A DNA stretch of 27,625 nt, filler included, from Dimorphilus gyrociliatus (lineage: Eukaryota > Animalia > Annelida): the NCBI GenBank assembly GCA_904063045.1. It is 2 parts of 2 records of this genome, joined end to end, with 100 filler letters (N's around TTAATTAATTAA, not from the genome) between each part and the next. Parts side by side here need not be neighbours in the genome. Positions count along the whole stretch, not along the records: positions 1 to 9,710 come from CAJFCJ010000284.1; 1 more part is not named here. The stretch is one strand, 5' to 3'. The notes under the pieces are model-generated. The model saw nothing but the letters and a program-made list of their open reading frames with translations, ran no database searches and was not told where the DNA came from. Below are positions 1 through 9,710 of this stretch, piece by piece. Position 1 is the stretch's first letter; each line of letters starts with the position of its first letter. The position numbers were made by a program, and so were the translations under genes.

Positions 1-742
1 GAATACGACAGACTCAAGGGATGTGTTGCTTCTTCGTTGGATGACGATGATGATGCTACGATGATGACAAAGAGGAAGATCCAAAGAAGGAGTCGTTTTC
101 TACTCTGAAGAAAACTTCAAGGGAAAACGTTGCGTTGTCAAGGACGATGTACCAGATTTGTCCCAAATCGGATGTGATAACACTGCCGAATCGCTATCGT
201 GTTTGGTGGCAAGAGATGGCAACTCTATGATGACGACAAATATGAAGACGAATTGGTCATCTTGAAGCAAGGAAAATACCCAACTTTGAAGAGATACGGT
301 GCTGATGACAAAGTTTCATCTATCAGAGATCTCCCAGAAGACGTTGACAATTGTAAACCAAACCCATGCAAAACAGGAGCAACATGCGCCGATCTCGCCA
401 ATGGTTTCAAATGTACCTGCAAAGATGATGATTTCGAATACGATGAAGCCAAAGGCTGTGTACGAAAGATAGTGAAAGAGCCAAGAGAAGGTATCATTTT
501 GTACGATGAAGAAAACTTCAAGGGAGATTTCATCGTCGTTGAAAAGGATACTCCAGAATTATCTGAATTGAAATTTGGAGATAGAGTCGAATCATTGAAA
601 GTTATTGGCAAGAAAACATGGGAATTGTACGACAAGGGAGGATATGTTGATCCCATTGCCCGTTTCCCACCAGGAGAATACGACGTAATCAAACCAGGAA
701 ACAAGGCCAGTTCTCTCAGAGTTGCACCAAAGACATCTGACT
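1..742 (+). CDS. 5'-partial exon of the large modular protein: tail of an EGF, beta/gamma-crystallin domain, acidic EGF-like domain, second beta/gamma-crystallin domain (three apparent 1-bp deletions in 1..198)
   Basis: ORF 199..750 plus upstream frames give two Greek-key domains (GVVFYSEENFKG...WQLYDDDKY...DDKVSSIR and GIILYDEENFKG...GDRVESLKV...WELYD...GNKASSLR) around the EGF CKPNPCKTGATCADLANGFKCTCKDDDFEYDEAKGC. Frame switches occur near 59, 85 and 192. ORF 199 begins at GTG, so it is not a true start. Confidence 0.8.
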
Positions 743-816
743 GTAAGTAGACCATTAAAGGATTATACAAATAATCCACAATGAACATATCATTATCACT
801 TGCATCTTTGTAACAG
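743..816 (+). other. Spliceosomal intron (74 nt, phase 1) linking the crystallin exon to the EGF array
   Basis: GTAAGT donor at 743 and TAACAG acceptor ending at 816. Removing it skips the TAG at 748-750 and gives ...KTSD-L-PNYCAKNPCKRGARC, the start of an EGF repeat. Confidence 0.75.
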
Positions 817-1333
817 TGCCCAATTATTGTGCCAAGAACCCATGTAAACGTGGAGCTAGATGTTTCGGTTTGAAGAAGGGATTTGAAGAAGGGATACCGT
901 TGCATTTGTCCATCTGGACAAAAATACTATAGAACAAAGGATGTCAAAAACTTTTGACCAGCCCATGTACAGCAACCCATGTAGAAAGCCAGCTAGATGT
1001 TTCCGTCTGGTTTGACTAGATACAGATGTGTATGCAAGAGAAGTCAATATTATAGCGCAAAGGCTGGATGTGTGTCCAGACCTTGTGCCAGAAAACCATG
1101 TGGAAAAGCAAGATGTATCAACATCGGTTCACGTCATAGATGTGTTTGTCCACCAAGAAGCATCTTTGATGCTAAAACAAATCTTGCAAGATCTGCTACA
1201 CAATTGTGCAAGAAGAATTCTTGCAAAGAAAGGCTAGAGTGTATCTCTCGGCAGAAGAATCAGATGTCAATGTGGAAGAGGATTCAGATACAACGCCAAA
1301 AAAGGCTGTGTCAAATTCAACTTCAACCCATGC
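817..1333 (+). CDS. Frameshift-interrupted continuation: about four further cationic EGF-like repeats of the same gene
   Basis: Fragments in shifting frames: NYCAKNPCKRGARC, GYRCICPSGQKYYRT, NPCRKPARC, RYRCVCKRSQYYSAKAGCVSRPCARKPCGKARCINIGSRHRCVCPP, LCKKNSC...GRRIRCQCGRGFRYNAKKGC. Indels lie near 891, 938, 973, 1008, 1228 and 1238. Confidence 0.7.
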
Positions 1334-4300
1334 TTGAAGAAACCATGCAAGGGAGCCAGATGTATGAGAAGAGGTTTCAACGGTTATAGATGTCTTTGTA
1401 AACCAGGCTTCAGATATTATGGCAAAAAGGGATGTGTGAAATACACAAGACCAAACCCATGCTTGAAGAGACCATGTAAGGGAGCTAAATGTCTCAGAAG
1501 AGGTATTGCTGGATATAGATGTGTCTGCAAGAAGGGACTCTTCTACAACAGAACAAAAGGCTGTATCAAATACAACAAGAACCCATGTTCAAAGAGACCA
1601 TGCAAGGGAGCCAGATGTTTGAGAAGAGGTCTTTCTGGTTACAGATGTTTGTGCAAGAGAGGATTTAGATACAATAGCAAAAAGGGATGCGTTAAATACA
1701 CAAGACCAAACCCATGTTTGAAGAAACCATGCAAGGGTGCAAGATGTATGAGAAGAGGACTCTTCGGATACAGATGTGTATGCAAGAAGGGATTCAGATA
1801 CAACAGAAGAAAGGGATGTATCAAGATGACCAAACCAGTCAACTTGTGCAAGAAGAACTCTTGCATAGGAAATGCTAGATGTTTGACTTTGGGTAGAAGA
1901 ATCAGATGCCAATGTAAGAAGGGATTCAGATACAACGCCAAATCTGGCTGCGTTAAATACGGAAAGAACCCATGCTTGAAGAGACCATGCAAAAAATCCA
2001 GATGCATCAGAAGAGGTATCACTGGATACAAATGTTTATGTAGACCAGGATTCATTTATCGCGGAGCTAAAGGCTGTGTGAAATATAATCCATGTGCCAA
2101 GAACCCATGTAAGAAAACTAAATGTGTGAGAAGAGGAAGATTCGGTTACAGATGTCTCTGTAAGACAGGATTCAGATACAACAGCAAAAAGGGATGCGTT
2201 AAATACACAAGACCAAACCCATGTTTGAAGAAACCATGCAAGGGTGCAAGATGCATGAGAAGAGGCATTTTCGGATACAGATGTGTATGCAAGAAGGGAT
2301 TCAGATACAACAGAAGAAAGGGATGTATCAAGATGACCAAACCAGTCAACTTGTGCAAGAAGAACTCTTGCAGAGGAAATGCTAGATGTTTGACTTTGGG
2401 CAGAAGAATCAGATGCCAATGTAAGAAGGGATTCAGATACAACGCCAAATCTGGCTGCGTTAAATACGGAAAGAACCCATGCTTGAAGAAACCATGCAAA
2501 GGAACAAGATGCATGAGAAGAGGACTCTTCGGTTACAGATGCGTCTGTAAGAGAGGATTCAGATACAACTCAAGAAAGGGATGTGTTAAATACAACCCAT
2601 GCTTGAGAAGACCATGCAAGGGAGCTAAATGCTCAACACGTGGAAAATTCGGTTACAAATGTACTTGCAAGAAGGGATTATTCTATAATAGCCGACTTGG
2701 ATGTATCAAGGGCAACCCATGTTTGAGAAGACCATGCAAAGGAAGCAAATGTGTAAGAAAAGGATTGTTTGGATACAGATGTCTTTGTAAAAAGGGATTC
2801 GTCTACAACAGAAGAAGAGGTTGTATCAAATTGAACAGACGCAATCCATGTTTGAAGAGACCATGCAAGGGAGCTAGATGTGTGAGAAGAGGACTCTTCG
2901 GATACAGATGCTTGTGCAAGAGAGGATTCAGATACAACAGCAGAAAGGGATGTGTTAAATACACAAGACCAAACCCATGTGCAAAAAGACCATGTAAGAG
3001 CGCTAGATGTGTGAGACGTGGTCCTTTCGGATTCACCTGTTTGTGTAAGAAGGGATTCTACTATCAACCAAGAAGAGGATGCTTGAAATACGGCAAGGTC
3101 AATCCATGTGCCAAGAAGCCATGTTTGAAATCTAGATGTCAAAGAAGAGGCCGTTCTGGATACAGATGCGTCTGCAAAAAGGGATTCTTCTACAACCGCA
3201 AGAGAGGATGTATGAAATTCAACCCCTGCCGTAGAAGACCATGCGGAAAAGTTGCCAGATGTGTTGCCAGAGGTTTCAGATACAGATGCGTATGCAAGAA
3301 AGGCTTCAGATTCAACAGAAGAAACAACAAATGTGTTAAGATTATCCCAGTCACAACAAATCAACCACCAACAACTCCATCTACTGGTACTCCACCAACA
3401 ACCGAAGTTCCAACAACAGAAGCTCCAACAACTGAAGCTCCAACCACAGAAGCTCCAACCACAGAAGCTCCAACCACAGAAGCTCCAACCACAGAAGCTC
3501 CAACCACAGAAGCTCCAACCACAGAAGCTCCAACCACAGAAGCGCCTACCACACCAGAACAACCAACTACTCCTGAAGAACCAACCACACCAGAACAACC
3601 AACTACTCCTGAAGAACCAACCACACCAGAACAACCAACCACACCAGAACAACCAACAACACCAGAACAACCAACTACTCCTGAAGAACCAACCACACCA
3701 GAACAACCAACAACACCAGAACAACCAACCACACCAGAACAACCAACTACTGAAGCTCCTACCACTCCTCCTACCACTACTCCATCTACTACTCTTGAAA
3801 CAACCACTGATGTCATTTCATTCCCTGATAGACGTCCACCTCAAGGTCAACAAGATGATGATAGCGATAATGAAGATGAAAAATACTTTGTTCCCGATCC
3901 TCCAGCAAAACCCAAGCCTCGTCCTTTGGGTATGCACAGTAAAATCATTGAAGATGGTGATATTGTCGGTAGCACTGAACAACCAGGATTCGAAGCCCAG
4001 AACAGCAGACCAAAATTGTCTGGATGGAAGCCTTCTCCATCTGATGAGAGACCAACACTTACAGTAGACATTGGTGATGTGTTGGGAGTTCACGGTATCG
4101 GAACAAAGGGTGCCAAGGGAGAAGATTGTTATGTTAAGAAGTACACTCTCGAAGTATCTAAGGATGGTAATAGCTTTGAAACATTGAAGGATAAAGACGA
4201 TGCCGAAAAGGTGAAGGTGTGGAAGGGAAACAAAGATGATGATTCGTGGAAACATCATTGTCTCCATAGATACTATGGTAAACCAGTCGAGGCTAAATTT

Positions 4301-4786
4301 GTAAGAATTGTGCCAATTAAATCAAACAACAACTGTGTAGGTCTTAGAGCTGAATTGTACGGCTTCAGAAAGGCTGAAGATGAAAAATTGGTCAATGTCA
4401 TTAAGAAGGATATCTGGACAAAGAGTCCTGGTGGATGTCAATGTTATTTCGACAAGAGTAGAATGGATTGTGCTTGTTGTTATCCAGGAGGTTGTCAATG
4501 CAGCAAATCTAACCATCAACAATGTGTGCAATGCGGATATCCTGATAGATGTGGTGATCCTCGCGAAGAAGAAGTAAGAGATCCATGGACCAAATCTAAG
4601 GGTGGATGTCCTTGCGCTGATGATGCAACAAAGGATTGTGCTTGTTGTCAAAACAATGGATGTCAATGTGGTGGAAAGAACAGAAATAAATGTACACAAT
4701 GCGGTCGTCCAGATCTTTGTGAATCCCAAGATAATAGTCCTGAATTCTGTGTTCCACGCACATGCCCTGCTAAAAAAACACCATAA
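1334..4786 (+). CDS. Main ORF of a large modular extracellular-type protein: 16 K/R-rich EGF-like repeats, Thr/Pro/Glu mucin-like stalk, F5/8 type C (discoidin) domain, two 10-Cys modules
   Basis: Repeats follow NPC-x4-C-x4-C-x9-C-x-C-x11-C. PTTEA and PTTPEQ tandem repeats follow. The FA58C signature is PLGMHSKIIEDGDI...LTVDIG...GIGTKG...YVKKYTLEVSKDG...KGNKD...AKFVRIVP...LRAELYG (about 3918..4368). The annotated start is TTG and the frame is open from about 1238, so this is not the real N-terminus. AATAAA directly follows the stop. Confidence 0.88.
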   Translation: MKKPCKGARCMRRGFNGYRCLCKPGFRYYGKKGCVKYTRPNPCLKRPCKGAKCLRRGIAGYRCVCKKGLFYNRTKGCIKYNKNPCSKRPCKGARCLRRGLSGYRCLCKRGFRYNSKKGCVKYTRPNPCLKKPCKGARCMRRGLFGYRCVCKKGFRYNRRKGCIKMTKPVNLCKKNSCIGNARCLTLGRRIRCQCKKGFRYNAKSGCVKYGKNPCLKRPCKKSRCIRRGITGYKCLCRPGFIYRGAKGCVKYNPCAKNPCKKTKCVRRGRFGYRCLCKTGFRYNSKKGCVKYTRPNPCLKKPCKGARCMRRGIFGYRCVCKKGFRYNRRKGCIKMTKPVNLCKKNSCRGNARCLTLGRRIRCQCKKGFRYNAKSGCVKYGKNPCLKKPCKGTRCMRRGLFGYRCVCKRGFRYNSRKGCVKYNPCLRRPCKGAKCSTRGKFGYKCTCKKGLFYNSRLGCIKGNPCLRRPCKGSKCVRKGLFGYRCLCKKGFVYNRRRGCIKLNRRNPCLKRPCKGARCVRRGLFGYRCLCKRGFRYNSRKGCVKYTRPNPCAKRPCKSARCVRRGPFGFTCLCKKGFYYQPRRGCLKYGKVNPCAKKPCLKSRCQRRGRSGYRCVCKKGFFYNRKRGCMKFNPCRRRPCGKVARCVARGFRYRCVCKKGFRFNRRNNKCVKIIPVTTNQPPTTPSTGTPPTTEVPTTEAPTTEAPTTEAPTTEAPTTEAPTTEAPTTEAPTTEAPTTEAPTTPEQPTTPEEPTTPEQPTTPEEPTTPEQPTTPEQPTTPEQPTTPEEPTTPEQPTTPEQPTTPEQPTTEAPTTPPTTTPSTTLETTTDVISFPDRRPPQGQQDDDSDNEDEKYFVPDPPAKPKPRPLGMHSKIIEDGDIVGSTEQPGFEAQNSRPKLSGWKPSPSDERPTLTVDIGDVLGVHGIGTKGAKGEDCYVKKYTLEVSKDGNSFETLKDKDDAEKVKVWKGNKDDDSWKHHCLHRYYGKPVEAKFVRIVPIKSNNNCVGLRAELYGFRKAEDEKLVNVIKKDIWTKSPGGCQCYFDKSRMDCACCYPGGCQCSKSNHQQCVQCGYPDRCGDPREEEVRDPWTKSKGGCPCADDATKDCACCQNNGCQCGGKNRNKCTQCGRPDLCESQDNSPEFCVPRTCPAKKTP
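1660..2500 (+). repeat. Higher-order duplication within the EGF array (507-bp period = four EGF units)
   Basis: The block from ...tacacaagaccaaacccatgtttgaagaaaccatgcaagggtgcaagatg... through ...ggaaagaacccatgcttgaag recurs nearly identically 507 bp downstream. Shadow ORFs ending at 1912 and 2419, and starting at 1639 and 2146, show the same offset. Confidence 0.85.
3395..3757 (+). repeat. Coding tandem repeats: 10 x 15 bp (PTTEV/PTTEA), 11 x 18 bp (PTTPEQ/PTTPEE), then one more PTTEA
   Basis: Read directly: ccaaccacagaagct units at 3395..3544 and ccaaccacaccagaacaa-type units at 3545..3742. Confidence 0.95.
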
Positions 4787-5996
4787 ATAAATGACTATCT
4801 CTGTCCACTCAAAACTGAAATGATTTTGGCTATATGGGACGATATAATGTGTTTAAAATATTTTTGGTTGTGGATTTACTTGTTAGTTGCATATAAAAAA
4901 GAGAAATAAATTCAAATCTGAAAAGTCTGATTTGTCTGTCAAATGAACTTAAGGTCAAAGTGTTGCTTTTTCTAATATTTAACACTTTTTTTAGGAAATA
5001 AATTAGTTTTTAAGCGTCTGATAGATTGTTTTTCAGATTAGAGATGAGATTTGTAAGTAATTTCGAACGCTAAAGAGATTGATTACAAGACTTTATTTCA
5101 AAGCAAAAAAAATGTGTTAATGATGTTTGCTAAGATATCATTTCAACATAGGCACAGTTGAAAGTATTTAGCATAATGAATTTGCAGAAATTTTTTAAGA
5201 TTGGTCATAGTTTAAGTTTAAACAGTTTTTAGAACTTAAAAAAATACATTACAATGTCTGTTTGAAGGGGTAGACTTCATGATTACAGTTGAAGGTGCTG
5301 AATTAGAGAAAGATCAGCTGCGTGTAGTGTATTAAAGTTGCCGGAAGTGCTTTTTTGAAAAAGAAGGACGTCTTTTTTATAGGAGCTGATAGGAGGTATA
5401 TTTATAATAGAATATGATGTGGAATTTATATATTTCGTTCAAAAGCACATCTCCCTCTTATTTCGTAGGGTTTTTTTTATCTTCTCTGAATTTCTAGTAT
5501 TTTTTCAACGTCTGAAAGTCAAAGAAGTATGATTTAATCGGGAATAGAATCTTTTGAGGATAAAATACAGTGTATTCAGTTGAATAAAACTTATTTTAGA
5601 TGTTCTCTACATGGAAAGATATTTCTCATTGGCTATTCATAAGTATCATTTAGTAAATATTGCTAATAGGTACTTCTATGTTCTTTAGTTTTAGCCTACA
5701 AACGTGCATTAGCGATGCAATTAAAAATGAACTTGCATTGAATATGGTAGTACTGTTAGTGCTAGATGACTAATTTGTTGATAGTTCTGAATTCGTAATT
5801 AAATATCATCATTCAACTAGCATGAAAAATATAAGCCTTGTCAAAAAGAAATTAATAGCAATAGCTGCAAAATATAAGATCTAGAATGATTAATATCAAA
5901 TTTTTATGGAATAATTGCGATTGCCTTGGTATTTTATGGTTTTAAACAGTTTTGCGCCAGAAAAGAAACAATTATTTACTAAGAAGTTAGGGCGTT

Positions 5997-6048
5997 TTTC
6001 AAGAAAAGTCTATGCCTATTCGAATTCGCGACACCTCTTCTATATATA
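5997..6048 (+). promoter_or_regulatory. Candidate heat-shock element (tTTCa aGAAa aGTCt, 5997..6011) and TATA-like box (6041..6048) upstream of the sHSP gene
   Basis: Three alternating nGAAn/nTTCn pentamers with one mismatch, about 30 bp before TATATATA and about 220 bp before the ATG. Short motifs in AT-rich DNA can arise by chance. Confidence 0.35.
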
Positions 6049-6232
6049 CATGCGATCAATACACCTTTATGCTGCGTAGACCACATAAAAGGCTCATTGA
6101 AATTTTCAAGTTAGCACGGGCGGTACTTTAATATTAACAGATAAACAATATGCCAATAATAAACTTTTAGAATAAAACCGACTCTGGACTCTGTCATTTG
6201 CGCAGTTCTAATTGAAAAATGCTATAATAAGC

Positions 6233-6910
6233 ATGCAAAAGAAAGCGTTCTTAAGTGACATTCAACACGAATTAGAGAAGCAGAGAAGAGAATGGGGATC
6301 TGAAATAAAAAGACTGACTCAAGGAATTTCAAATGATGATAAGAAAGTATCAAAATCAACTTCATTAGTTGATCATTCATCTGGTAAACCGATCTTTAAG
6401 GCATACTTCAACGTCCGAGAATTTTCGAAAGATGAGGTGACTGTACAAGCAGACAGTCTTACAAATAAAATTGTTGTTAAAGCGACTAATAAGAAAGGAA
6501 TTTTAAGTCGGACCTTAACCCAAAAGGCAAACTTACCTAAATTTGCCGATACAAGGAATATAACGAAGCGAATACGATCTGATGGAATATTGGAAGTTAA
6601 TATTCCCTTGTTGTATCACTTTCCTTCTGAAGAAGAAGCGAAATCTTTCGTTTATCGAGTAGACAAGAAACATGGAAATGGTAAAAAATGCTTGGAAATT
6701 GTCGTAAACCTAACGGATGGAATTGATCCCGACGACGTCGATCTTCAAATTGTTGATGATAACGTTCTATTTGTTAGCGCCGATTCCAGATATGGTGGGA
6801 AAAGCTTAAAGAAAAGATATCATTTACCCAAAGATTTTGACGTGGACAATATCAGTGCCGAGATAACTGACGAGAATAATGTGACTATTTTTGTGCCAGT
6901 CTTATCATAG
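6233..6910 (+). CDS. Small heat-shock protein with two tandem alpha-crystallin (HSP20) domains, p40/Tsp36-like
   Basis: Domain 1 is FKAYFNVREFSKDEVTV...SRTLTQKANLP...SDGILEVNIP and domain 2 is IVVNLTDGIDPDDVDLQIVDDNVLFV...KRYHLPKDFDVDNISAEITDENNVTIFVP. The N-terminal RREWGSEIKRL resembles flatworm p40 by recollection. The track start at 6212 is TTG; the first in-frame ATG is at 6233. Confidence 0.8.
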   Translation: MQKKAFLSDIQHELEKQRREWGSEIKRLTQGISNDDKKVSKSTSLVDHSSGKPIFKAYFNVREFSKDEVTVQADSLTNKIVVKATNKKGILSRTLTQKANLPKFADTRNITKRIRSDGILEVNIPLLYHFPSEEEAKSFVYRVDKKHGNGKKCLEIVVNLTDGIDPDDVDLQIVDDNVLFVSADSRYGGKSLKKRYHLPKDFDVDNISAEITDENNVTIFVPVLS

Positions 6911-7055
6911 TTGTTATCAAATCAGATCCACAAGCTTCATTTATAAAGTATACCTTAGACTTTTATTATAAATAGTTAGTGCTCACTTTTATTTCTTCCT
7001 GAAGATTTAAATACTAAAATGGAGAACTATCGATCTAAATGTCAATAATTTTCTC

Positions 7056-7134
7056 ATATATATATATTTATATATATATATATGTATTGCTGTGGAAAAA
7101 AGAATGAATAAAACTGATCAACCATTCTCGGATA

Positions 7135-7168
<34 letters not shown>
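7056..7168. repeat. (AT)n microsatellites at 7056..7083 and 7137..7168
   Basis: Visible dinucleotide runs. A shorter (AT)n run lies near 7573 and a (GA)n run near 7669. Confidence 0.95.
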
Positions 7169-7171
<3 letters not shown>

Positions 7172-8814
7172 TCTATATATTAATAGATAATATATATAAT
7201 TCAAATTAGATTATAAATATAATGGCATAAACATAAACTTATGAATAAATGACATTTAATATATACTCAATTCAAGTTGAAAAATATACAATATATATCT
7301 TAAATGATAAAAATTGAATCGTATAAATATCCAAAAATTCATCGCACGTACTACGTATAAGTTTGTTTAGATTTGTAGTATTGCTATGTTTGGAAAGTGT
7401 ATTTGTTTGAATTATTTTCTTAAAAATATAATGACTATTGAAGCAAGCCTATTACATTTAGAAGAGATACATATAGATGGTAATGAGTAGCAGGAATGAA
7501 TGACCTCTTTGATGTAGAATCAGTTGTTTTTTAATAAAGTAGATCAAAATATGGATTATATTTTTCCCATGATATATATATATATATATCTTTGTGTTCT
7601 AAATAAATATTAACTAAATATGTTTAATGTTTAAATTAAATATTATATAAATATCAAGAAAATATGTAGAGAGAGAGAGAGAAAGAAGAAGAGAGAACTT
7701 AGGATAAAGAGCGATAAATATAAATATCATATCACAATTTACAAATATAAAGATAGAAATCATTGCTTAATTTCATATTCAATCTTATTATTTTCTTTAT
7801 AAGAACAATCAATCTGCAGTAATTCGTTTATAACTTTTTGTTTTTGTCTAAAGGGAGACGTGATATATCTTTCGTCTAAAGGAGAAACTGAATATTATAT
7901 AATTCAAGTCTGATGAATTCCATTCACTTTCTCTTGTCAATAATAAGAAGTTTGTTTATTCTCTCTTTCTATATTATTTGTTTAAGGTAAAAAATAAGCA
8001 TTAATTATATGACGTCGATAAACGATTACGAAGTTTAATACTAGTTTAATAAGGTATATTAATATTTAAAAAAGTGATTAAAAGTTGGGTTTAGAATGAA
8101 TTTTCAACGTATTATCCCACTTAGAAATAATTGAATATGAAATCTTATTAGATTTATTTCCCAGGCTATTTTATATATGATTGTATTGCAATACTAGAAA
8201 TTAAAGCTCACAGACTATACCGCTGAATGAACATTGATTCATAGAAAAGTCCTTTGTTAGATACAACTTTGTTGTTTTAATCATGTAATGACTATCTCTA
8301 CCAAGAGAATAAGATAGAGATTCTAAAAAATTCGAGTAGATTAGTTACAAGAATAGTATCTGTCTGTATGCTGTCGTCATCAACAAGTTATACTGTCAAA
8401 CAGCCATTACTTAACAGATATATCTTATGTGTATATTAGAATATACACTTAAATTAACCATTAAAGTTTGATGAAGAAACAAGTTAATACACAGATTATT
8501 ATTAACACTTTCTACTATTTAATATACATATCCTACACAATTTTCATAAACTCTATATTCAGTATTAATGTTTTATGTTAACAACTATCTATGTTCAATT
8601 ATGCAATAAGCTTAATTTTTACATGGGTGCTAATGTTTTTTTCCAGATGAATTAATAATGTATCATTTTTCGAAGTAGAATTAATACATTATACATCTTA
8701 GTTGACAACACATATCATGAAAGGTCATTTACTTATTCGAATATAAATATCATTAATAATTTATTAAGCAAAAGCAGTTAACTCAGTACAAAAAATTTCT
8801 TAGTATTTTCTAAT

Positions 8815-9696
8815 ATGGCATCGTTTGGGATTGTTCTCCTTTATTTTATTTATATCTTAAATATCGATAAGTACGCTTGTTTTTATCTTAAATCTATTAT
8901 ATTTCATTTTTTAATTCTTCTTATTAGCAGATGTAGTTCGAAAAATATTCAAAAAGTCGCCAACAGATCTGGTATATATTATAATTAATACAGTATTATA
9001 TTCAATAGTAATTGGAAATTACTATTATTTTTAAAGATTGCGGCAATGTTGATTGCAATTATGGTGAATGTAAACAATTTGAAAACGGTACTGAATGTTA
9101 CTGTTATGATGGAATGTATCATGAAAATAGATGCAAAGTGACGAATAAATCAGAGAGTATAAATGAATATAGAAATTAAATTTTACTACTCTTTCAAATC
9201 TATCTTAAATATACAGATGTATTTTACATAAAAAATGCATTTGGTAGTGTGTCGTTCGTGAACGAAGAGCCTACTGAAAAGGTCTACACAATAAATGTTA
9301 ACCCCGGTATGTATAGGTTCGAATAAATTTTTAATATATTCAAAGAGAGATTAGAGAAATAAAATGGAATTTGAAAAATGTATTAATTCTTTTCTTTCTT
9401 TTCAATAGGTAAAAACATTGCACTTTTCATGAGATATCCATACTTTTCATCTTCAAGAAGTTTATGCTATTGTTCTGATAATTATGTACAGATTGGAGAT
9501 AAGAAATTATGCGAGTTAAATCAATTTCCCGAAGTAATTCTAATAATAAAAAGGAATTAATTCTTTGTTACATAGAATAACTATTGTTTCTTTTTTTTTT
9601 AAATTAAGCCTATAATAATTAATTCAGATACCTTGGAAATACGTCCACACTGGGCACATATGTCAATGTTTTTCAATACTGACTTCTTTGAATTAG
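8815..9696 (+). CDS. Multi-exon gene for a secreted EGF + CUB-like protein, cut by the contig end (exons 8815-8870, 8931-8971, 9037-9156, 9217-9306, 9409-9533, 9628-9696)
   Basis: GT..AG introns of 60, 65, 60, 102 and 94 nt with phase-compatible exons. The spliced product is MASFGIVLLYFIYILNIDK-CSSKNIQKVANRSD-CGNVDCNYGECKQFENGTECYCYDGMYHENRCKVTNKSE-NVFYIKNAFG...VNPG-KNIALFMRYPYF...CSDNYVQIGDKKLCELNQFPE-IPWKYVHTGHI. The CUB call rests on motif resemblance, and the last exon needs a 1-bp correction. Confidence 0.75.
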
Positions 9697-9710
9697 GTAA
9701 AAAATAACAT

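What the first reader, a model, noticed from the sequence alone, without database searches (positions are those of the whole stretch)
817..3350. About 20 tandem polycationic EGF-like repeats with no acidic residue: candidate novel bioadhesive or structural protein
Seen: the 16 repeats in the main ORF span about 670 aa without a single Asp or Glu. Roughly one residue in three is Lys/Arg (15 of 44 in one unit), most units carry 1-3 Tyr, and the last Cys loop is longer than in canonical EGF (x11 versus about x8). About four more repeats lie in the frameshifted part. Known: mussel foot protein-2 is a Lys/Tyr-rich EGF-repeat adhesive, flatworm Mlig-ap1 combines EGFs with K/R-rich regions, and sea-star Sfp1 combines EGF with discoidin domains. 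Inference: this is a secreted glue, cement, capsule or polyanion-binding scaffold protein. I do not recognise this full architecture (crystallin/EGF, cationic EGFs, mucin, FA58C, Cys modules). No signal peptide is visible because the 5' end lies outside the window.
Basis: partly seen in the sequence, partly recalled or inferred. Interest (0 to 1): 0.75.

Follow-up and report, generated by a model that had tools for sequence, protein, structure and literature searches.

The report
Polycationic EGF-repeat matrix protein of annelid
This is the last exon of a tandemly amplified gene of the miniature annelid Dimorphilus gyrociliatus; it encodes a large secreted protein with 20 strongly positively charged EGF-like modules, a plausible but untested cocoon, glue or mucus component and an unusual variant of a known type of EGF-repeat material protein.

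Summary
Window 1325-3340 encodes 16 in-frame EGF-like units: 669 aa, no Asp or Glu, 32% Lys+Arg, 14% Cys. Four more units lie at 817-1324.

The frameshifts there are most likely assembly errors at a PacBio contig end. An internal copy on contig C126 reads all 20 units in one open frame (838 aa, net charge +259).

The genome is Dimorphilus gyrociliatus. The gene (public model DgyrCDS13760, truncated and mis-spliced) occurs at least five times in tandem.

The conceptual full protein is about 2,750 aa:
- a signal peptide;
- novel Lys/Arg/Tyr-rich repeats;
- EGF_CA-VWA twice, and beta/gamma-crystallins;
- 20 cationic EGFs and a Pro/Thr mucin;
- a discoidin domain and two uncharacterised Cys modules.

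The units are old and under purifying selection (dN/dS about 0.2). No orthologue with this architecture was found. The only comparably cationic EGF arrays are cephalopod EGF/VWA proteins of a different EGF subtype.

My best reading is a secreted cohesive or structural protein that binds polyanions. No expression or localisation data could be obtained. A mussel-like DOPA chemistry is not supported, because no tyrosinase was detected in the genome. I rate it a new variant of a known kind, of moderate interest.

The parts
1..742 (+). 3' part of the preceding coding exon, cut by the contig start. It holds the end of an EGF, an acidic poly-Asp linker, then beta/gamma-crystallin, EGF and beta/gamma-crystallin.
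   Evidence: Frame-1/2 translations. Pfam Crystall E=1.5e-18 and EGF on 199-747. The sister copy reads it as one open 312-aa frame. Three private 1-nt deletions at about 57, 85 and 191 break the frame only in this copy.
743..816 (+). Intron, 74 nt, phase 1, GTAAGT...AACAG.
   Evidence: Sequence, coordinates, and the exon map of the public model on contig C27.
817..1324 (+). EGF-like units 1-4 of the terminal exon, out of frame in this copy.
   Evidence: Eight private deletion events (seven of 1 nt, one of 2 nt) and one 13-nt tandem duplication (878-890) are absent from the other four copies. The intact copy reads units 1-4 in frame.
1325..3340 (+). EGF-like units 5-20: 16 polycationic units of 40-44 aa with no Asp or Glu.
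   Evidence: alignment A1. Pfam EGF and cEGF. AlphaFold2 model of three units has pLDDT 79.6 with two beta-hairpins per unit. Best Foldseek matches are Notch EGF arrays, E=6e-6. dN/dS 0.20.
3341..3814 (+). Pro/Thr/Glu-rich mucin-like spacer (TTEAP and TTPEQP/TTPEEP repeats), acidic, with no Lys, Arg or Cys. It is presumably O-glycosylated.
   Evidence: Tandem repeats of period 15, 18 and 36 nt. Composition T60 P42 E26 of 158 aa. Length differs between copies in frame.
3941..4357 (+). Discoidin (F5/8 type C, FA58C) domain. The Pfam match covers 4019-4357; the start is approximate.
   Evidence: Pfam PF00754 E=1.9e-17, residues 896-1008 of the ORF. It is 46% identical across the cassette to two JGI proteins and also matches Saccoglossus.
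4409..4723 (+). Two copies (4409-4555, 4580-4723) of an uncharacterised module of about 48 aa with 9 invariant Cys: D-x-WTK...GC-x-C...C-A-C-C...GCQC...C-x-x-C...C.
   Evidence: Alignment A3. No Pfam match. No PDB sequence match. No significant fold match, model pLDDT 69. Conserved in JGI proteins, Saccoglossus, Branchiostoma and Ciona and in a paralogue on contig C16.
4784..4791 (+). Stop codon TAA (4784-4786) overlapping an AATAAA hexamer (4786-4791).
   Evidence: Similarity to the other gene copies ends at about 4774, so this is the last copy of the array.

Best explanation
Positions 817-3350 are the EGF array of the terminal exon of a real, tandemly amplified protein-coding gene of the annelid Dimorphilus gyrociliatus. 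The public model, DgyrCDS13760, is truncated by a contig end and carries false introns.

The conceptual product is about 2,750 aa, in this order:
- a signal peptide;
- about 480 aa of Lys/Arg/Tyr-rich repeats with no known family;
- EGF_CA-VWA, a crystallin, a second EGF_CA-VWA, an EGF, and crystallin-EGF-crystallin;
- 20 non-calcium-binding EGF-like units carrying net charge +259;
- an acidic, probably O-glycosylated Pro/Thr mucin spacer;
- a discoidin domain;
- two novel Cys modules.

Shown here: the gene structure, the domain order, the charge, the EGF fold, purifying selection on the units, the gene amplification, the secretory-type N-terminus, and the absence of an orthologue in the searched databases.

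Inferred: it is secreted and acts as a cohesive, load-bearing component of an extracellular material. In this animal the candidates are the gelatinous egg cocoon, adhesive gland secretion or gliding mucus. The disulfide-stapled EGF rod would give extensible stiffness, as in the octopus egg tether protein octovafibrin. Its dense positive charge would condense it with polyanionic glycans or mucins and with negatively charged surfaces. The terminal VWA (DxSxS metal-site motif present), discoidin and Cys modules would mediate binding and multimerisation.
For: Organism and gene: the top hit is DgyrCDS13760 of Dimorphilus gyrociliatus, on a contig of 662,881 nt, which is the length of contig C27.

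Amplification: there are five copies at 98-99% identity on C27, C126 (three) and C284.

Intact frame: the 1,347-aa open frame with 20 units is read in internal copies. Private 1-nt indels cluster at the contig ends and are nearly absent from internal copies.

Domains.

Secretion: the N-terminus MLPIPRLCLILLLAATAGALILK is hydrophobic and there is no other TM-like segment. A mini-paralogue inside the array has its own signal peptide, 3 EGFs of the same subtype and a mucin.

EGF fold.

Selection: dN/dS 0.20 with dS about 1.2.

Charge is specific to this cluster: other EGF-rich genes of the genome are neutral or acidic, as are generic EGF proteins.

Precedents for tandem EGF arrays in secreted holdfast, adhesive and egg-case materials: mfp-2, Sfp3/4, Mlig-ap1, sbp9 and octovafibrin (PMC9382459, PMC6410801, PMC12817120, PMC10336842).

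The animal makes gelatinous cocoons and has several gland types.
Against: - There are no expression, localisation, proteomic or binding data.
- The signal peptide was judged by hydropathy only.
- VWA-EGF combinations also occur in internal matrix proteins such as matrilins and collagen VI-like proteins, which are the best VWA hits.
- No tyrosinase was detected, so mussel-type catechol adhesion is unlikely.
- The window's own copy is cut at the contig start and reads as broken. Its integrity rests on the artefact argument.
- The big profile search did not return this protein itself, so that library is not complete for this genome.
Confidence: 0.6

Rival explanations
1. It is an internal extracellular-matrix scaffold (matrilin or collagen-VI-like, in basement membrane or cuticle). 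It binds sulfated proteoglycans inside the body and is not an externally secreted glue, cocoon or mucus component.
For: The VWA domains are most similar to those of collagen VI-like and matrilin-like multi-VWA proteins. EGF-VWA is the matrilin arrangement. Polycations bind heparan or chondroitin sulfate equally well.
Against: There is no C-terminal coiled coil and no collagen triple helix. The mucin spacer, the at least five-fold tandem amplification and a signal-peptide mini-paralogue in the array are more typical of bulk secretory products. No orthologue was found in other animals, which is unusual for core matrix components.
Confidence: 0.2
2. The window copy, and perhaps the whole array, is a decaying pseudogene family. 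On this view the frameshifts at 57-1238 are real.
For: Eleven deletion events and a 13-nt duplication break the frame in this copy. A 13-nt tandem duplication is not the most typical consensus error. The end copies on C27 and C126 are also broken.
Against: Every broken stretch lies within a few kb of a contig end. The two internal copies have one and zero single-base indels over 9 kb and read open frames of 1,347 and 1,359 aa. The remaining 3.5 kb of the window copy is open. Units show dN/dS 0.2. The assembly is old PacBio CLR polished with short reads, which map poorly in repeats.
Confidence: 0.08
3. It is a polyprotein or coat with antimicrobial function. The 43-aa, six-Cys, strongly cationic units act as defensin-like peptides, intact on the surface or released at the many dibasic sites, and protect eggs or epidermis.
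For: The size, charge (about +13 per unit) and disulfide content of the units resemble cationic antimicrobial peptides. Dibasic motifs are abundant.
Against: Dibasic residues lie inside the disulfide-bonded loops, not only in linkers. Long flanking VWA, crystallin, discoidin and mucin domains are not features of known antimicrobial peptide precursors. The units fold as ordinary tandem EGFs.
Confidence: 0.07
4. It is a gamete or egg-coat recognition protein that bridges cells through its discoidin domain, as the EGF-discoidin proteins MFGE8/SED1 and EDIL3 do.
For: It combines EGF with FA58C. Rapidly evolving, lineage-specific repeat proteins are common in reproduction. The DNA came from adult females.
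Against: It has one discoidin domain, not the tandem pair. The cationic array has no RGD motif, since it has no Asp. The much larger multidomain architecture and the amplification point to a bulk material.
Confidence: 0.05

Closest known systems
[quoted passage not shown]
   Same: It is a secreted, basic, Cys-rich protein built of tandem EGF-like repeats, and it is the cohesive bulk of an adhesive plaque (PMC12817120, PMC6410801). The consensus of the present units starts NPC-x3-PCK-G, which I recall as similar to mfp-2 (from memory, not tested).
   Different: Here there are 20 units with essentially no acidic residue and a longer last loop (x11-12). They are embedded in a protein of about 2,750 aa with VWA, crystallin, mucin, discoidin and novel modules. 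No tyrosinase was found in the genome, so DOPA chemistry is doubtful. No direct alignment to mfp-2 could be made, because it was not retrieved by any search.
Octovafibrin (Octopus bimaculoides egg case and tether protein)
   Same: It has a long array (29) of non-calcium-binding EGF repeats flanked at both ends by carbohydrate-binding or assembly domains. It forms a load-bearing secreted egg-case material (PMC10336842). The present protein also has a non-calcium EGF array flanked by binding domains, and the animal encloses its eggs in a cocoon.
   Different: The flanks are C-type lectins in octovafibrin. Here they are VWA and crystallin on the N-terminal side and discoidin plus Cys modules on the C-terminal side. 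A polycationic character is not reported for octovafibrin. Homology was not tested.
Cephalopod cationic EGF/VWA/VWD proteins (Octopus bimaculoides 'neurogenic locus notch homolog protein 1', P0013/P0085; Argonauta hians P0015), uncharacterised
   Same: They are the only other strongly cationic EGF arrays found: +49 and +24 net charge per 200 aa, against +65 here. They combine these arrays with matrilin-type VWA domains, which BLASTP aligns with the VWA domains here (28% identity over the 843-column best alignment, E 5e-55), and they have a signal peptide.
   Different: Their EGFs are the short-loop hEGF type (last loop x8). They end in VWD-C8-TIL, not mucin-discoidin-Cys modules, and they lack crystallins and the N-terminal repeats. 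Their function is unknown. Cationic EGFs therefore probably arose independently.
Sea star footprint protein Sfp1, and Sfp3/4
   Same: These are large secreted adhesive proteins that combine EGF-like and FA58C domains. Tandem EGF arrays occur in Sfp3/4, and the proteins are Cys-rich and cohesive (PMC9382459, PMC12817120).
   Different: Sfp1 has VWD-C8-TIL and galactose-binding lectin domains and autocatalytic cleavage sites, none of which was found here. The EGFs of Sfp3/4 are calcium-binding.
Flatworm adhesive protein Mlig-ap1
   Same: It is extremely Lys/Arg-rich and secreted, with EGF repeats. Its positive charge binds negatively charged carbohydrates and gives cohesion, and heparin blocks attachment (PMC6410801).
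   Different: In Mlig-ap1 the charge sits in low-complexity KR regions, and the 17 EGFs are calcium-binding and fibrillin-like. Here the charge is built into the folded EGF units themselves. No sequence relationship was detected.
Matrilins
   Same: They have a VWA-EGF modular arrangement and a similar VWA subtype.
   Different: Matrilins end in a coiled-coil oligomerisation domain and have few, non-cationic EGFs. This protein has none of that C-terminus.

Membership tests
EGF-like domain (Pfam PF00008 / cEGF PF12662) | Six Cys with spacing C-x(4-7)-C-x(4-5)-C-x(8-10)-C-x-C-x(8-13)-C, plus conserved Gly and aromatic residues | tested here: met
   All 20 units have spacing 4 / 4-5 / 8-9 / 1 / 11-12. 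Invariant residues are G17, G28, G36 and Y/F31. Pfam EGF E=2.4e-31 and cEGF E=3.6e-10.
EGF-like domain (Pfam PF00008 / cEGF PF12662) | EGF fold: a major and a minor beta-hairpin per unit | tested here: met
   The AlphaFold2 model of three units has pLDDT 79.6 and four short strands per unit. The top Foldseek hits are Notch EGF arrays, E=6e-6, probability 1.0.
Calcium-binding EGF (EGF_CA, PF07645) | N-terminal D/N-x-D/N-E/Q motif and the Asp/Asn hydroxylation consensus between Cys3 and Cys4 | tested here: not met
   The 16 in-frame units contain no Asp or Glu at all, and the 20-unit array has 2 Asp and 0 Glu. EGF_CA matches only the two acidic EGFs upstream, next to the VWA domains.
Mussel foot protein 2 type adhesive | A secreted, basic protein made of tandem EGF-like repeats | tested here: met
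   Signal-like N-terminus. 20 EGFs with pI about 10.5.
Mussel foot protein 2 type adhesive | Tyr converted to DOPA by tyrosinase | tested here: inconclusive
   No PF00264 match was found anywhere in the genome by six-frame search. Animal haem peroxidase was found readily with the same method. The tyrosinase model rang in no control genome, so absence is not proven. The modification itself is not testable here.
Mussel foot protein 2 type adhesive | Sequence relationship to mfp-2 and presence in an adhesive secretion | not tested
Localisation needs wet-lab work.
Octovafibrin / fibropellin type EGF fibre protein | A long non-calcium EGF array flanked by terminal assembly or lectin domains | tested here: met
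   VWA and crystallin domains lie on the N-terminal side, and FA58C plus Cys modules on the C-terminal side, of a 20-unit non-calcium array.
Octovafibrin / fibropellin type EGF fibre protein | C-type lectin termini (octovafibrin), or C1s-like and avidin-like termini (fibropellin) | tested here: not met
   No such Pfam domains are present in any part of the protein.
Matrilin | VWA domain(s) followed by EGF repeats | tested here: met
   Two EGF_CA-VWA pairs with a DxSxS motif.
Matrilin | C-terminal coiled-coil oligomerisation domain | tested here: not met
   The C-terminus is mucin, FA58C and two Cys modules.
Gel-forming mucin / Sfp1-like (VWD-C8-TIL) proteins | VWD-C8-TIL multimerisation cassette | tested here: not met
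   It is absent from P0012 and from the window ORF. It is present in the JGI relatives that share the C-terminal cassette and in the Octopus protein.

The most novel reading that the evidence does not exclude
The polycationic EGF protein and a polyanionic partner form a charge-complementary, DOPA-free glue or cocoon system. The partner is the paralogue on contig C16, which has cationic PAN/apple domains, a stretch of more than 850 aa of strongly acidic Glu/Thr/Pro/Ser mucin, and the same discoidin plus two-Cys-module C-terminal cassette (39% identical). On secretion the two would co-assemble through the shared cassette and condense by complex coacervation. This would be analogous in principle to sandcastle-worm cement, but built from folded EGF rods and mucins and not from DOPA and phosphoserine peptides.
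Probability: 0.15. Interest if true: 0.7.

Novelty: new variant of a known kind. Interest (0 to 1): 0.45.

Why it matters
Tandem EGF arrays recur in marine holdfasts, glues and egg cases, but how they contribute is still debated. This protein is an extreme natural case. It has 20 folded EGF units with about +13 charge each and virtually no acidic residue, kept so by selection. It also has a novel Tyr/Lys/Arg-rich N-terminal repeat region and an uncharacterised Cys module that is conserved from annelids to amphioxus.

If it proves to be a cocoon or adhesive component of a culturable, small-genome annelid, it would offer three things:
- a tractable system for charge-driven (possibly DOPA-independent) underwater cohesion;
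- a compact recombinant building block;
- a corrected gene model for a locus that the public annotation truncates and mis-splices.

If it is only an internal matrix protein, it is a curiosity.

Tried and rejected
- Oikopleura house protein (oikosin). I considered this after the first search returned deuterostome hits. I rejected it when the EGF search identified Dimorphilus gyrociliatus.
- Real frameshifts or a pseudogene. Rejected as the main reading after comparing the five copies.
- ESM Atlas search of the EGF array. It gave only generic EGF clusters.
- Big profile search with the unit alignment. It gave 412 hits, none with this unit type and comparable charge. The top hits share the long-loop subtype but are not cationic: Tubulanus 'IgGFc-binding/zonadhesin-like', Patiria and Branchiostoma. 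The query's own protein was not returned, so the library is incomplete for this genome.
- Search for full-length orthologues with the public model's first 1,430 residues. Only VWA-level matches appeared, and nothing matched the N-terminal repeats.
- Naming the C-terminal Cys modules. No Pfam match, no PDB sequence match, and only insignificant TNFR-like fold matches.
- Rfam scan of the window. No RNA family.
No earlier notes, no transcript contigs and no sample origin for the JGI relatives could therefore be obtained.
Searches used the window ORF, single exons by reference, or the public model. The pieces were put side by side only to count residues.
- The contig is not human.
Full report
WHAT THE WINDOW IS. 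Places 1-9710 are the whole of a small contig (C284) of a 77.9-Mb assembly in 349 contigs. The EGF search returned DgyrCDS13760 of Dimorphilus gyrociliatus as top hit, on a contig of 662,881 nt. That is exactly the length of contig C27, which holds another copy of this gene. The published genome of this miniature annelid is a PacBio (PBcR/Quiver/Pilon) assembly of about 78 Mb in about 350 scaffolds (PMC7854359). The sequence is not human and carries no RNA family.

THE OBSERVATION. One frame is open from 1334 to 4786 (1,150 aa). Pfam finds EGF (E=2.4e-31), cEGF and one F5/8 type C domain in it. It finds beta/gamma-crystallin plus EGF in the ORF at 199-750. Tandem Repeats Finder reports periods of 129 and 255 nt over 1275-3016. 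Cutting at the Cys pattern gives 16 complete units at 1325-3340. Their spacing is C-x4-C-x4/5-C-x8/9-C-x-C-x11/12-C, and the consensus is NPCLKRPCKGARCxRRGxFGYRCxCKKGFRYNxRKGCVKY. The 669 aa contain 107 Lys, 108 Arg, 95 Cys, 40 Tyr and no Asp or Glu. Four further units lie at 817-1324 in shifted frames.

THE FRAMESHIFTS ARE MOST LIKELY ARTEFACTS.
- The gene is present five times at 98-99% identity: at the end of C27, three times on C126, and here.
- In a five-way alignment the window has eleven private deletion events (ten of 1 nt, one of 2 nt) and one 13-nt tandem duplication, all between 57 and 1238. That is the first 1.2 kb of its contig.
- The two other copies that abut contig ends show the same kind of private single-base indels near those ends.
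- The two internal copies have one and zero over 9 kb.
- An internal copy reads the whole terminal exon as one 1,347-aa frame with exactly 20 EGF units: 838 aa, 129 Lys, 132 Arg, 2 Asp, 0 Glu, net +259.
- The public protein model bridges the errors on C27 with false introns and ends at the contig edge.

GENE STRUCTURE.
- In the window the preceding exon ends at 742. It carries crystallin-EGF-crystallin.
- A 74-nt phase-1 intron (GTAAGT...AACAG) spans 743-816.
- The terminal exon starts at 817, which is precisely the finding's start.
- After the EGF array come an acidic Pro/Thr/Glu mucin-like spacer (3341-3814), a discoidin domain (Pfam 4019-4357), and two copies of an uncharacterised Cys module (4409-4555, 4580-4723).
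- The TAA stop at 4784 overlaps an AATAAA.
- Similarity to the other copies stops at about 4774, and unique AT-rich sequence follows. C284 therefore holds the last copy of the array.

UPSTREAM, OUTSIDE THE WINDOW. The sister copies supply about 4 kb more.
- The N-terminus, MLPIPRLCLILLLAATAGALILK, is hydrophobic, and it is the only TM-like stretch in the protein.
- About 480 aa follow with repeats of about 40-67 aa of the form GGKxYxLxK..SGRYYF..GK..Y. They are 23.5% Lys+Arg and 12% Tyr, have no Pfam match, and have no relative in any search.
- Then come EGF_CA-VWA, a crystallin, a second EGF_CA-VWA and further EGFs.
- Summing residues of the pieces gives about 2,756 aa, net charge +372 and pI about 9.8.
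- This count is the only place the pieces were put together.

ARE THE UNITS REAL EGF DOMAINS UNDER SELECTION? An AlphaFold2 model of three units has mean pLDDT 79.6, with two hairpins per unit. Its best PDB matches are Notch EGF arrays, E=6e-6. Pairwise Nei-Gojobori estimates among the 16 units give median dS 1.2, dN 0.29 and dN/dS 0.20. The ratio is below 1 in all 92 computable pairs. The array is therefore old, and its acid-free, Lys/Arg-rich character is maintained by selection. It is not a by-product of recent duplication. The units lack every calcium-binding signature.

RELATIVES.
- With the window ORF as query, the only strong EGF-array hit is the species' own model. Next come an Octopus bimaculoides protein (37% identity) and an Argonauta protein.
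- Measured as net charge in the most cationic Cys-rich 200-aa window, Dimorphilus scores +65, Octopus +49, Argonauta +24, and generic EGF proteins about -20 to +15.
- The cephalopod proteins also carry matrilin-type VWA domains that BLASTP aligns with those here (28% identity over the best alignment, E 5e-55) and a signal peptide. But their EGFs are the short-loop hEGF type and they end in VWD-C8-TIL.
- A profile of the unit searched against 1.84 billion representatives gave only 412 hits. The top ones (Tubulanus 'IgGFc-binding/zonadhesin-like', Patiria, Branchiostoma) share the long-loop subtype (..VYDPNKGC) but are not cationic.
- That subtype is also the one used by the acidic EGFs upstream in the same protein. 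The cationic array most likely evolved in this lineage by expansion and charge conversion of an ordinary long-loop EGF.
- Other EGF-rich genes of the genome are neutral or acidic.
- No protein of 1,095-3,486 aa matches more than the VWA/EGF part of the N-terminal 1,430 residues.

THE C-TERMINAL CASSETTE (discoidin plus two Cys modules).
- It is 46% identical to two JGI proteins that carry EGF_CA, ShK and VWD-C8-TIL upstream. It recurs in Saccoglossus, Branchiostoma and Ciona proteins.
- In Dimorphilus a paralogue on C16 has PAN/apple domains, more than 850 aa of strongly acidic mucin, and the same cassette (39% identity).
- Inside the array on C126 lies a 320-aa mini-paralogue with a signal peptide, three Tyr-rich EGFs of the same subtype and a TTEVP mucin.
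- The Cys module has no Pfam, PDB or fold match.

FUNCTION. Nothing here measures function. Several features point to a bulk secreted structural or cohesive protein:
- the secretory-type N-terminus;
- the mucin spacer;
- the tandem amplification;
- the neighbouring secreted mini-paralogue;
- the modular set VWA, EGF and discoidin.

Tandem EGF arrays are a recurrent feature of marine adhesives and holdfasts (mfp-2, Sfp3/4, sbp9, APAP-1, Mlig-ap1; PMC9382459, PMC12817120, PMC6410801). They are also the feature of the octopus egg case and tether protein octovafibrin. There, 29 non-calcium EGFs flanked by terminal lectins form load-bearing fibres (PMC10336842). In Mlig-ap1, positive charge binds anionic carbohydrate and provides cohesion (PMC6410801). 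D. gyrociliatus encloses its eggs in a gelatinous cocoon, glides on a ventral ciliary field, and has several gland types.

I therefore favour a cocoon, adhesive or mucus matrix role. In this reading the EGF rod bears load, and its charge condenses it with polyanionic glycans or mucins. No tyrosinase domain was found in the genome, while animal haem peroxidases were found easily. Dityrosine cross-linking would remain possible.

Rivals are an internal matrilin-like matrix protein, a real pseudogene, an antimicrobial coat or precursor, and a gamete-recognition protein. All are less well supported.

VERDICT. The gene is uncharacterised, lineage-specific in architecture, and an extreme cationic variant of a known kind of EGF-repeat material protein.

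Noticed in passing
window 6212-6910 (+): An ORF of 232 aa with an Hsp20/alpha-crystallin domain (Pfam E=2.5e-11). It is a small heat-shock protein gene in the unique flank downstream of the array. The listed start is a TTG, so the true start or an upstream exon is undetermined.
   Followed up: partly
window 7000-9710: Very AT-rich sequence (21-27% GC) with no ORF of 60 aa or more. It has (AT)n microsatellites at 7056-7087 and 7137-7198, which recur all over the genome, and a 28-nt tandem repeat at 7842-7895.
   Followed up: no
G000:C126, about 7055-8017, minus strand (L006:1466-2428): A complete 320-aa mini-paralogue lies between two copies of the big gene. It has a signal peptide, three Tyr-rich EGF units of the same long-loop subtype and a TTEVP/TTELP mucin tail. 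It accounts for the longer spacing (13.4 kb against 11.4 kb) between two of the repeats.
   Followed up: partly
G000:C16, about 577500-586150, plus strand (L020): A paralogue with about seven basic PAN/apple-like exons, more than 850 aa of strongly acidic PESxETE mucin, a discoidin domain and the same two Cys modules (39% identical cassette). It is a possible anionic partner of the cationic protein.
   Followed up: partly
window 4409-4723; also P0001-P0011: An uncharacterised module of about 48 aa with 9 invariant Cys (WTK..GCxC..CACC..GCQC..CxxC..C) occurs in pairs next to discoidin or LCCL domains. It is found in annelid, hemichordate, amphioxus and tunicate proteins. It has no Pfam, PDB or fold match.
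   Followed up: partly
L014:2554-4400 (contig C27), outside the window: The N-terminal 480 aa of the same protein consist of at least eight repeats of about 40-67 aa (GGKxYxLxK..SGRYYF..GK..Y). They are 12% Tyr and 23.5% Lys+Arg, with no family and no detectable relative. The motif is vaguely reminiscent of bacterial YG or cell-wall-binding repeats, which is an impression from memory only.
   Followed up: partly
G000:C27:659634-662881 and public protein DgyrCDS13760 (P0012): The public gene model is truncated by the contig end. It contains at least five false introns introduced to skip single-base assembly errors, which produces nonsense stretches inside the EGF array.
   Followed up: yes
G000:C7:3465989-3493157: A tandem array with a period of about 3.3 kb matches the Pro/Thr mucin part of the window at 68-75% DNA identity. 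It is probably another amplified mucin-like gene.
   Followed up: no
P0206 (Octopus sinensis 'von Willebrand factor-like'): Another strongly cationic cephalopod secreted protein (net +218 over 1,663 aa), rich in VWA domains. Polycationic VWA/EGF proteins may be a wider cephalopod theme.
   Followed up: no
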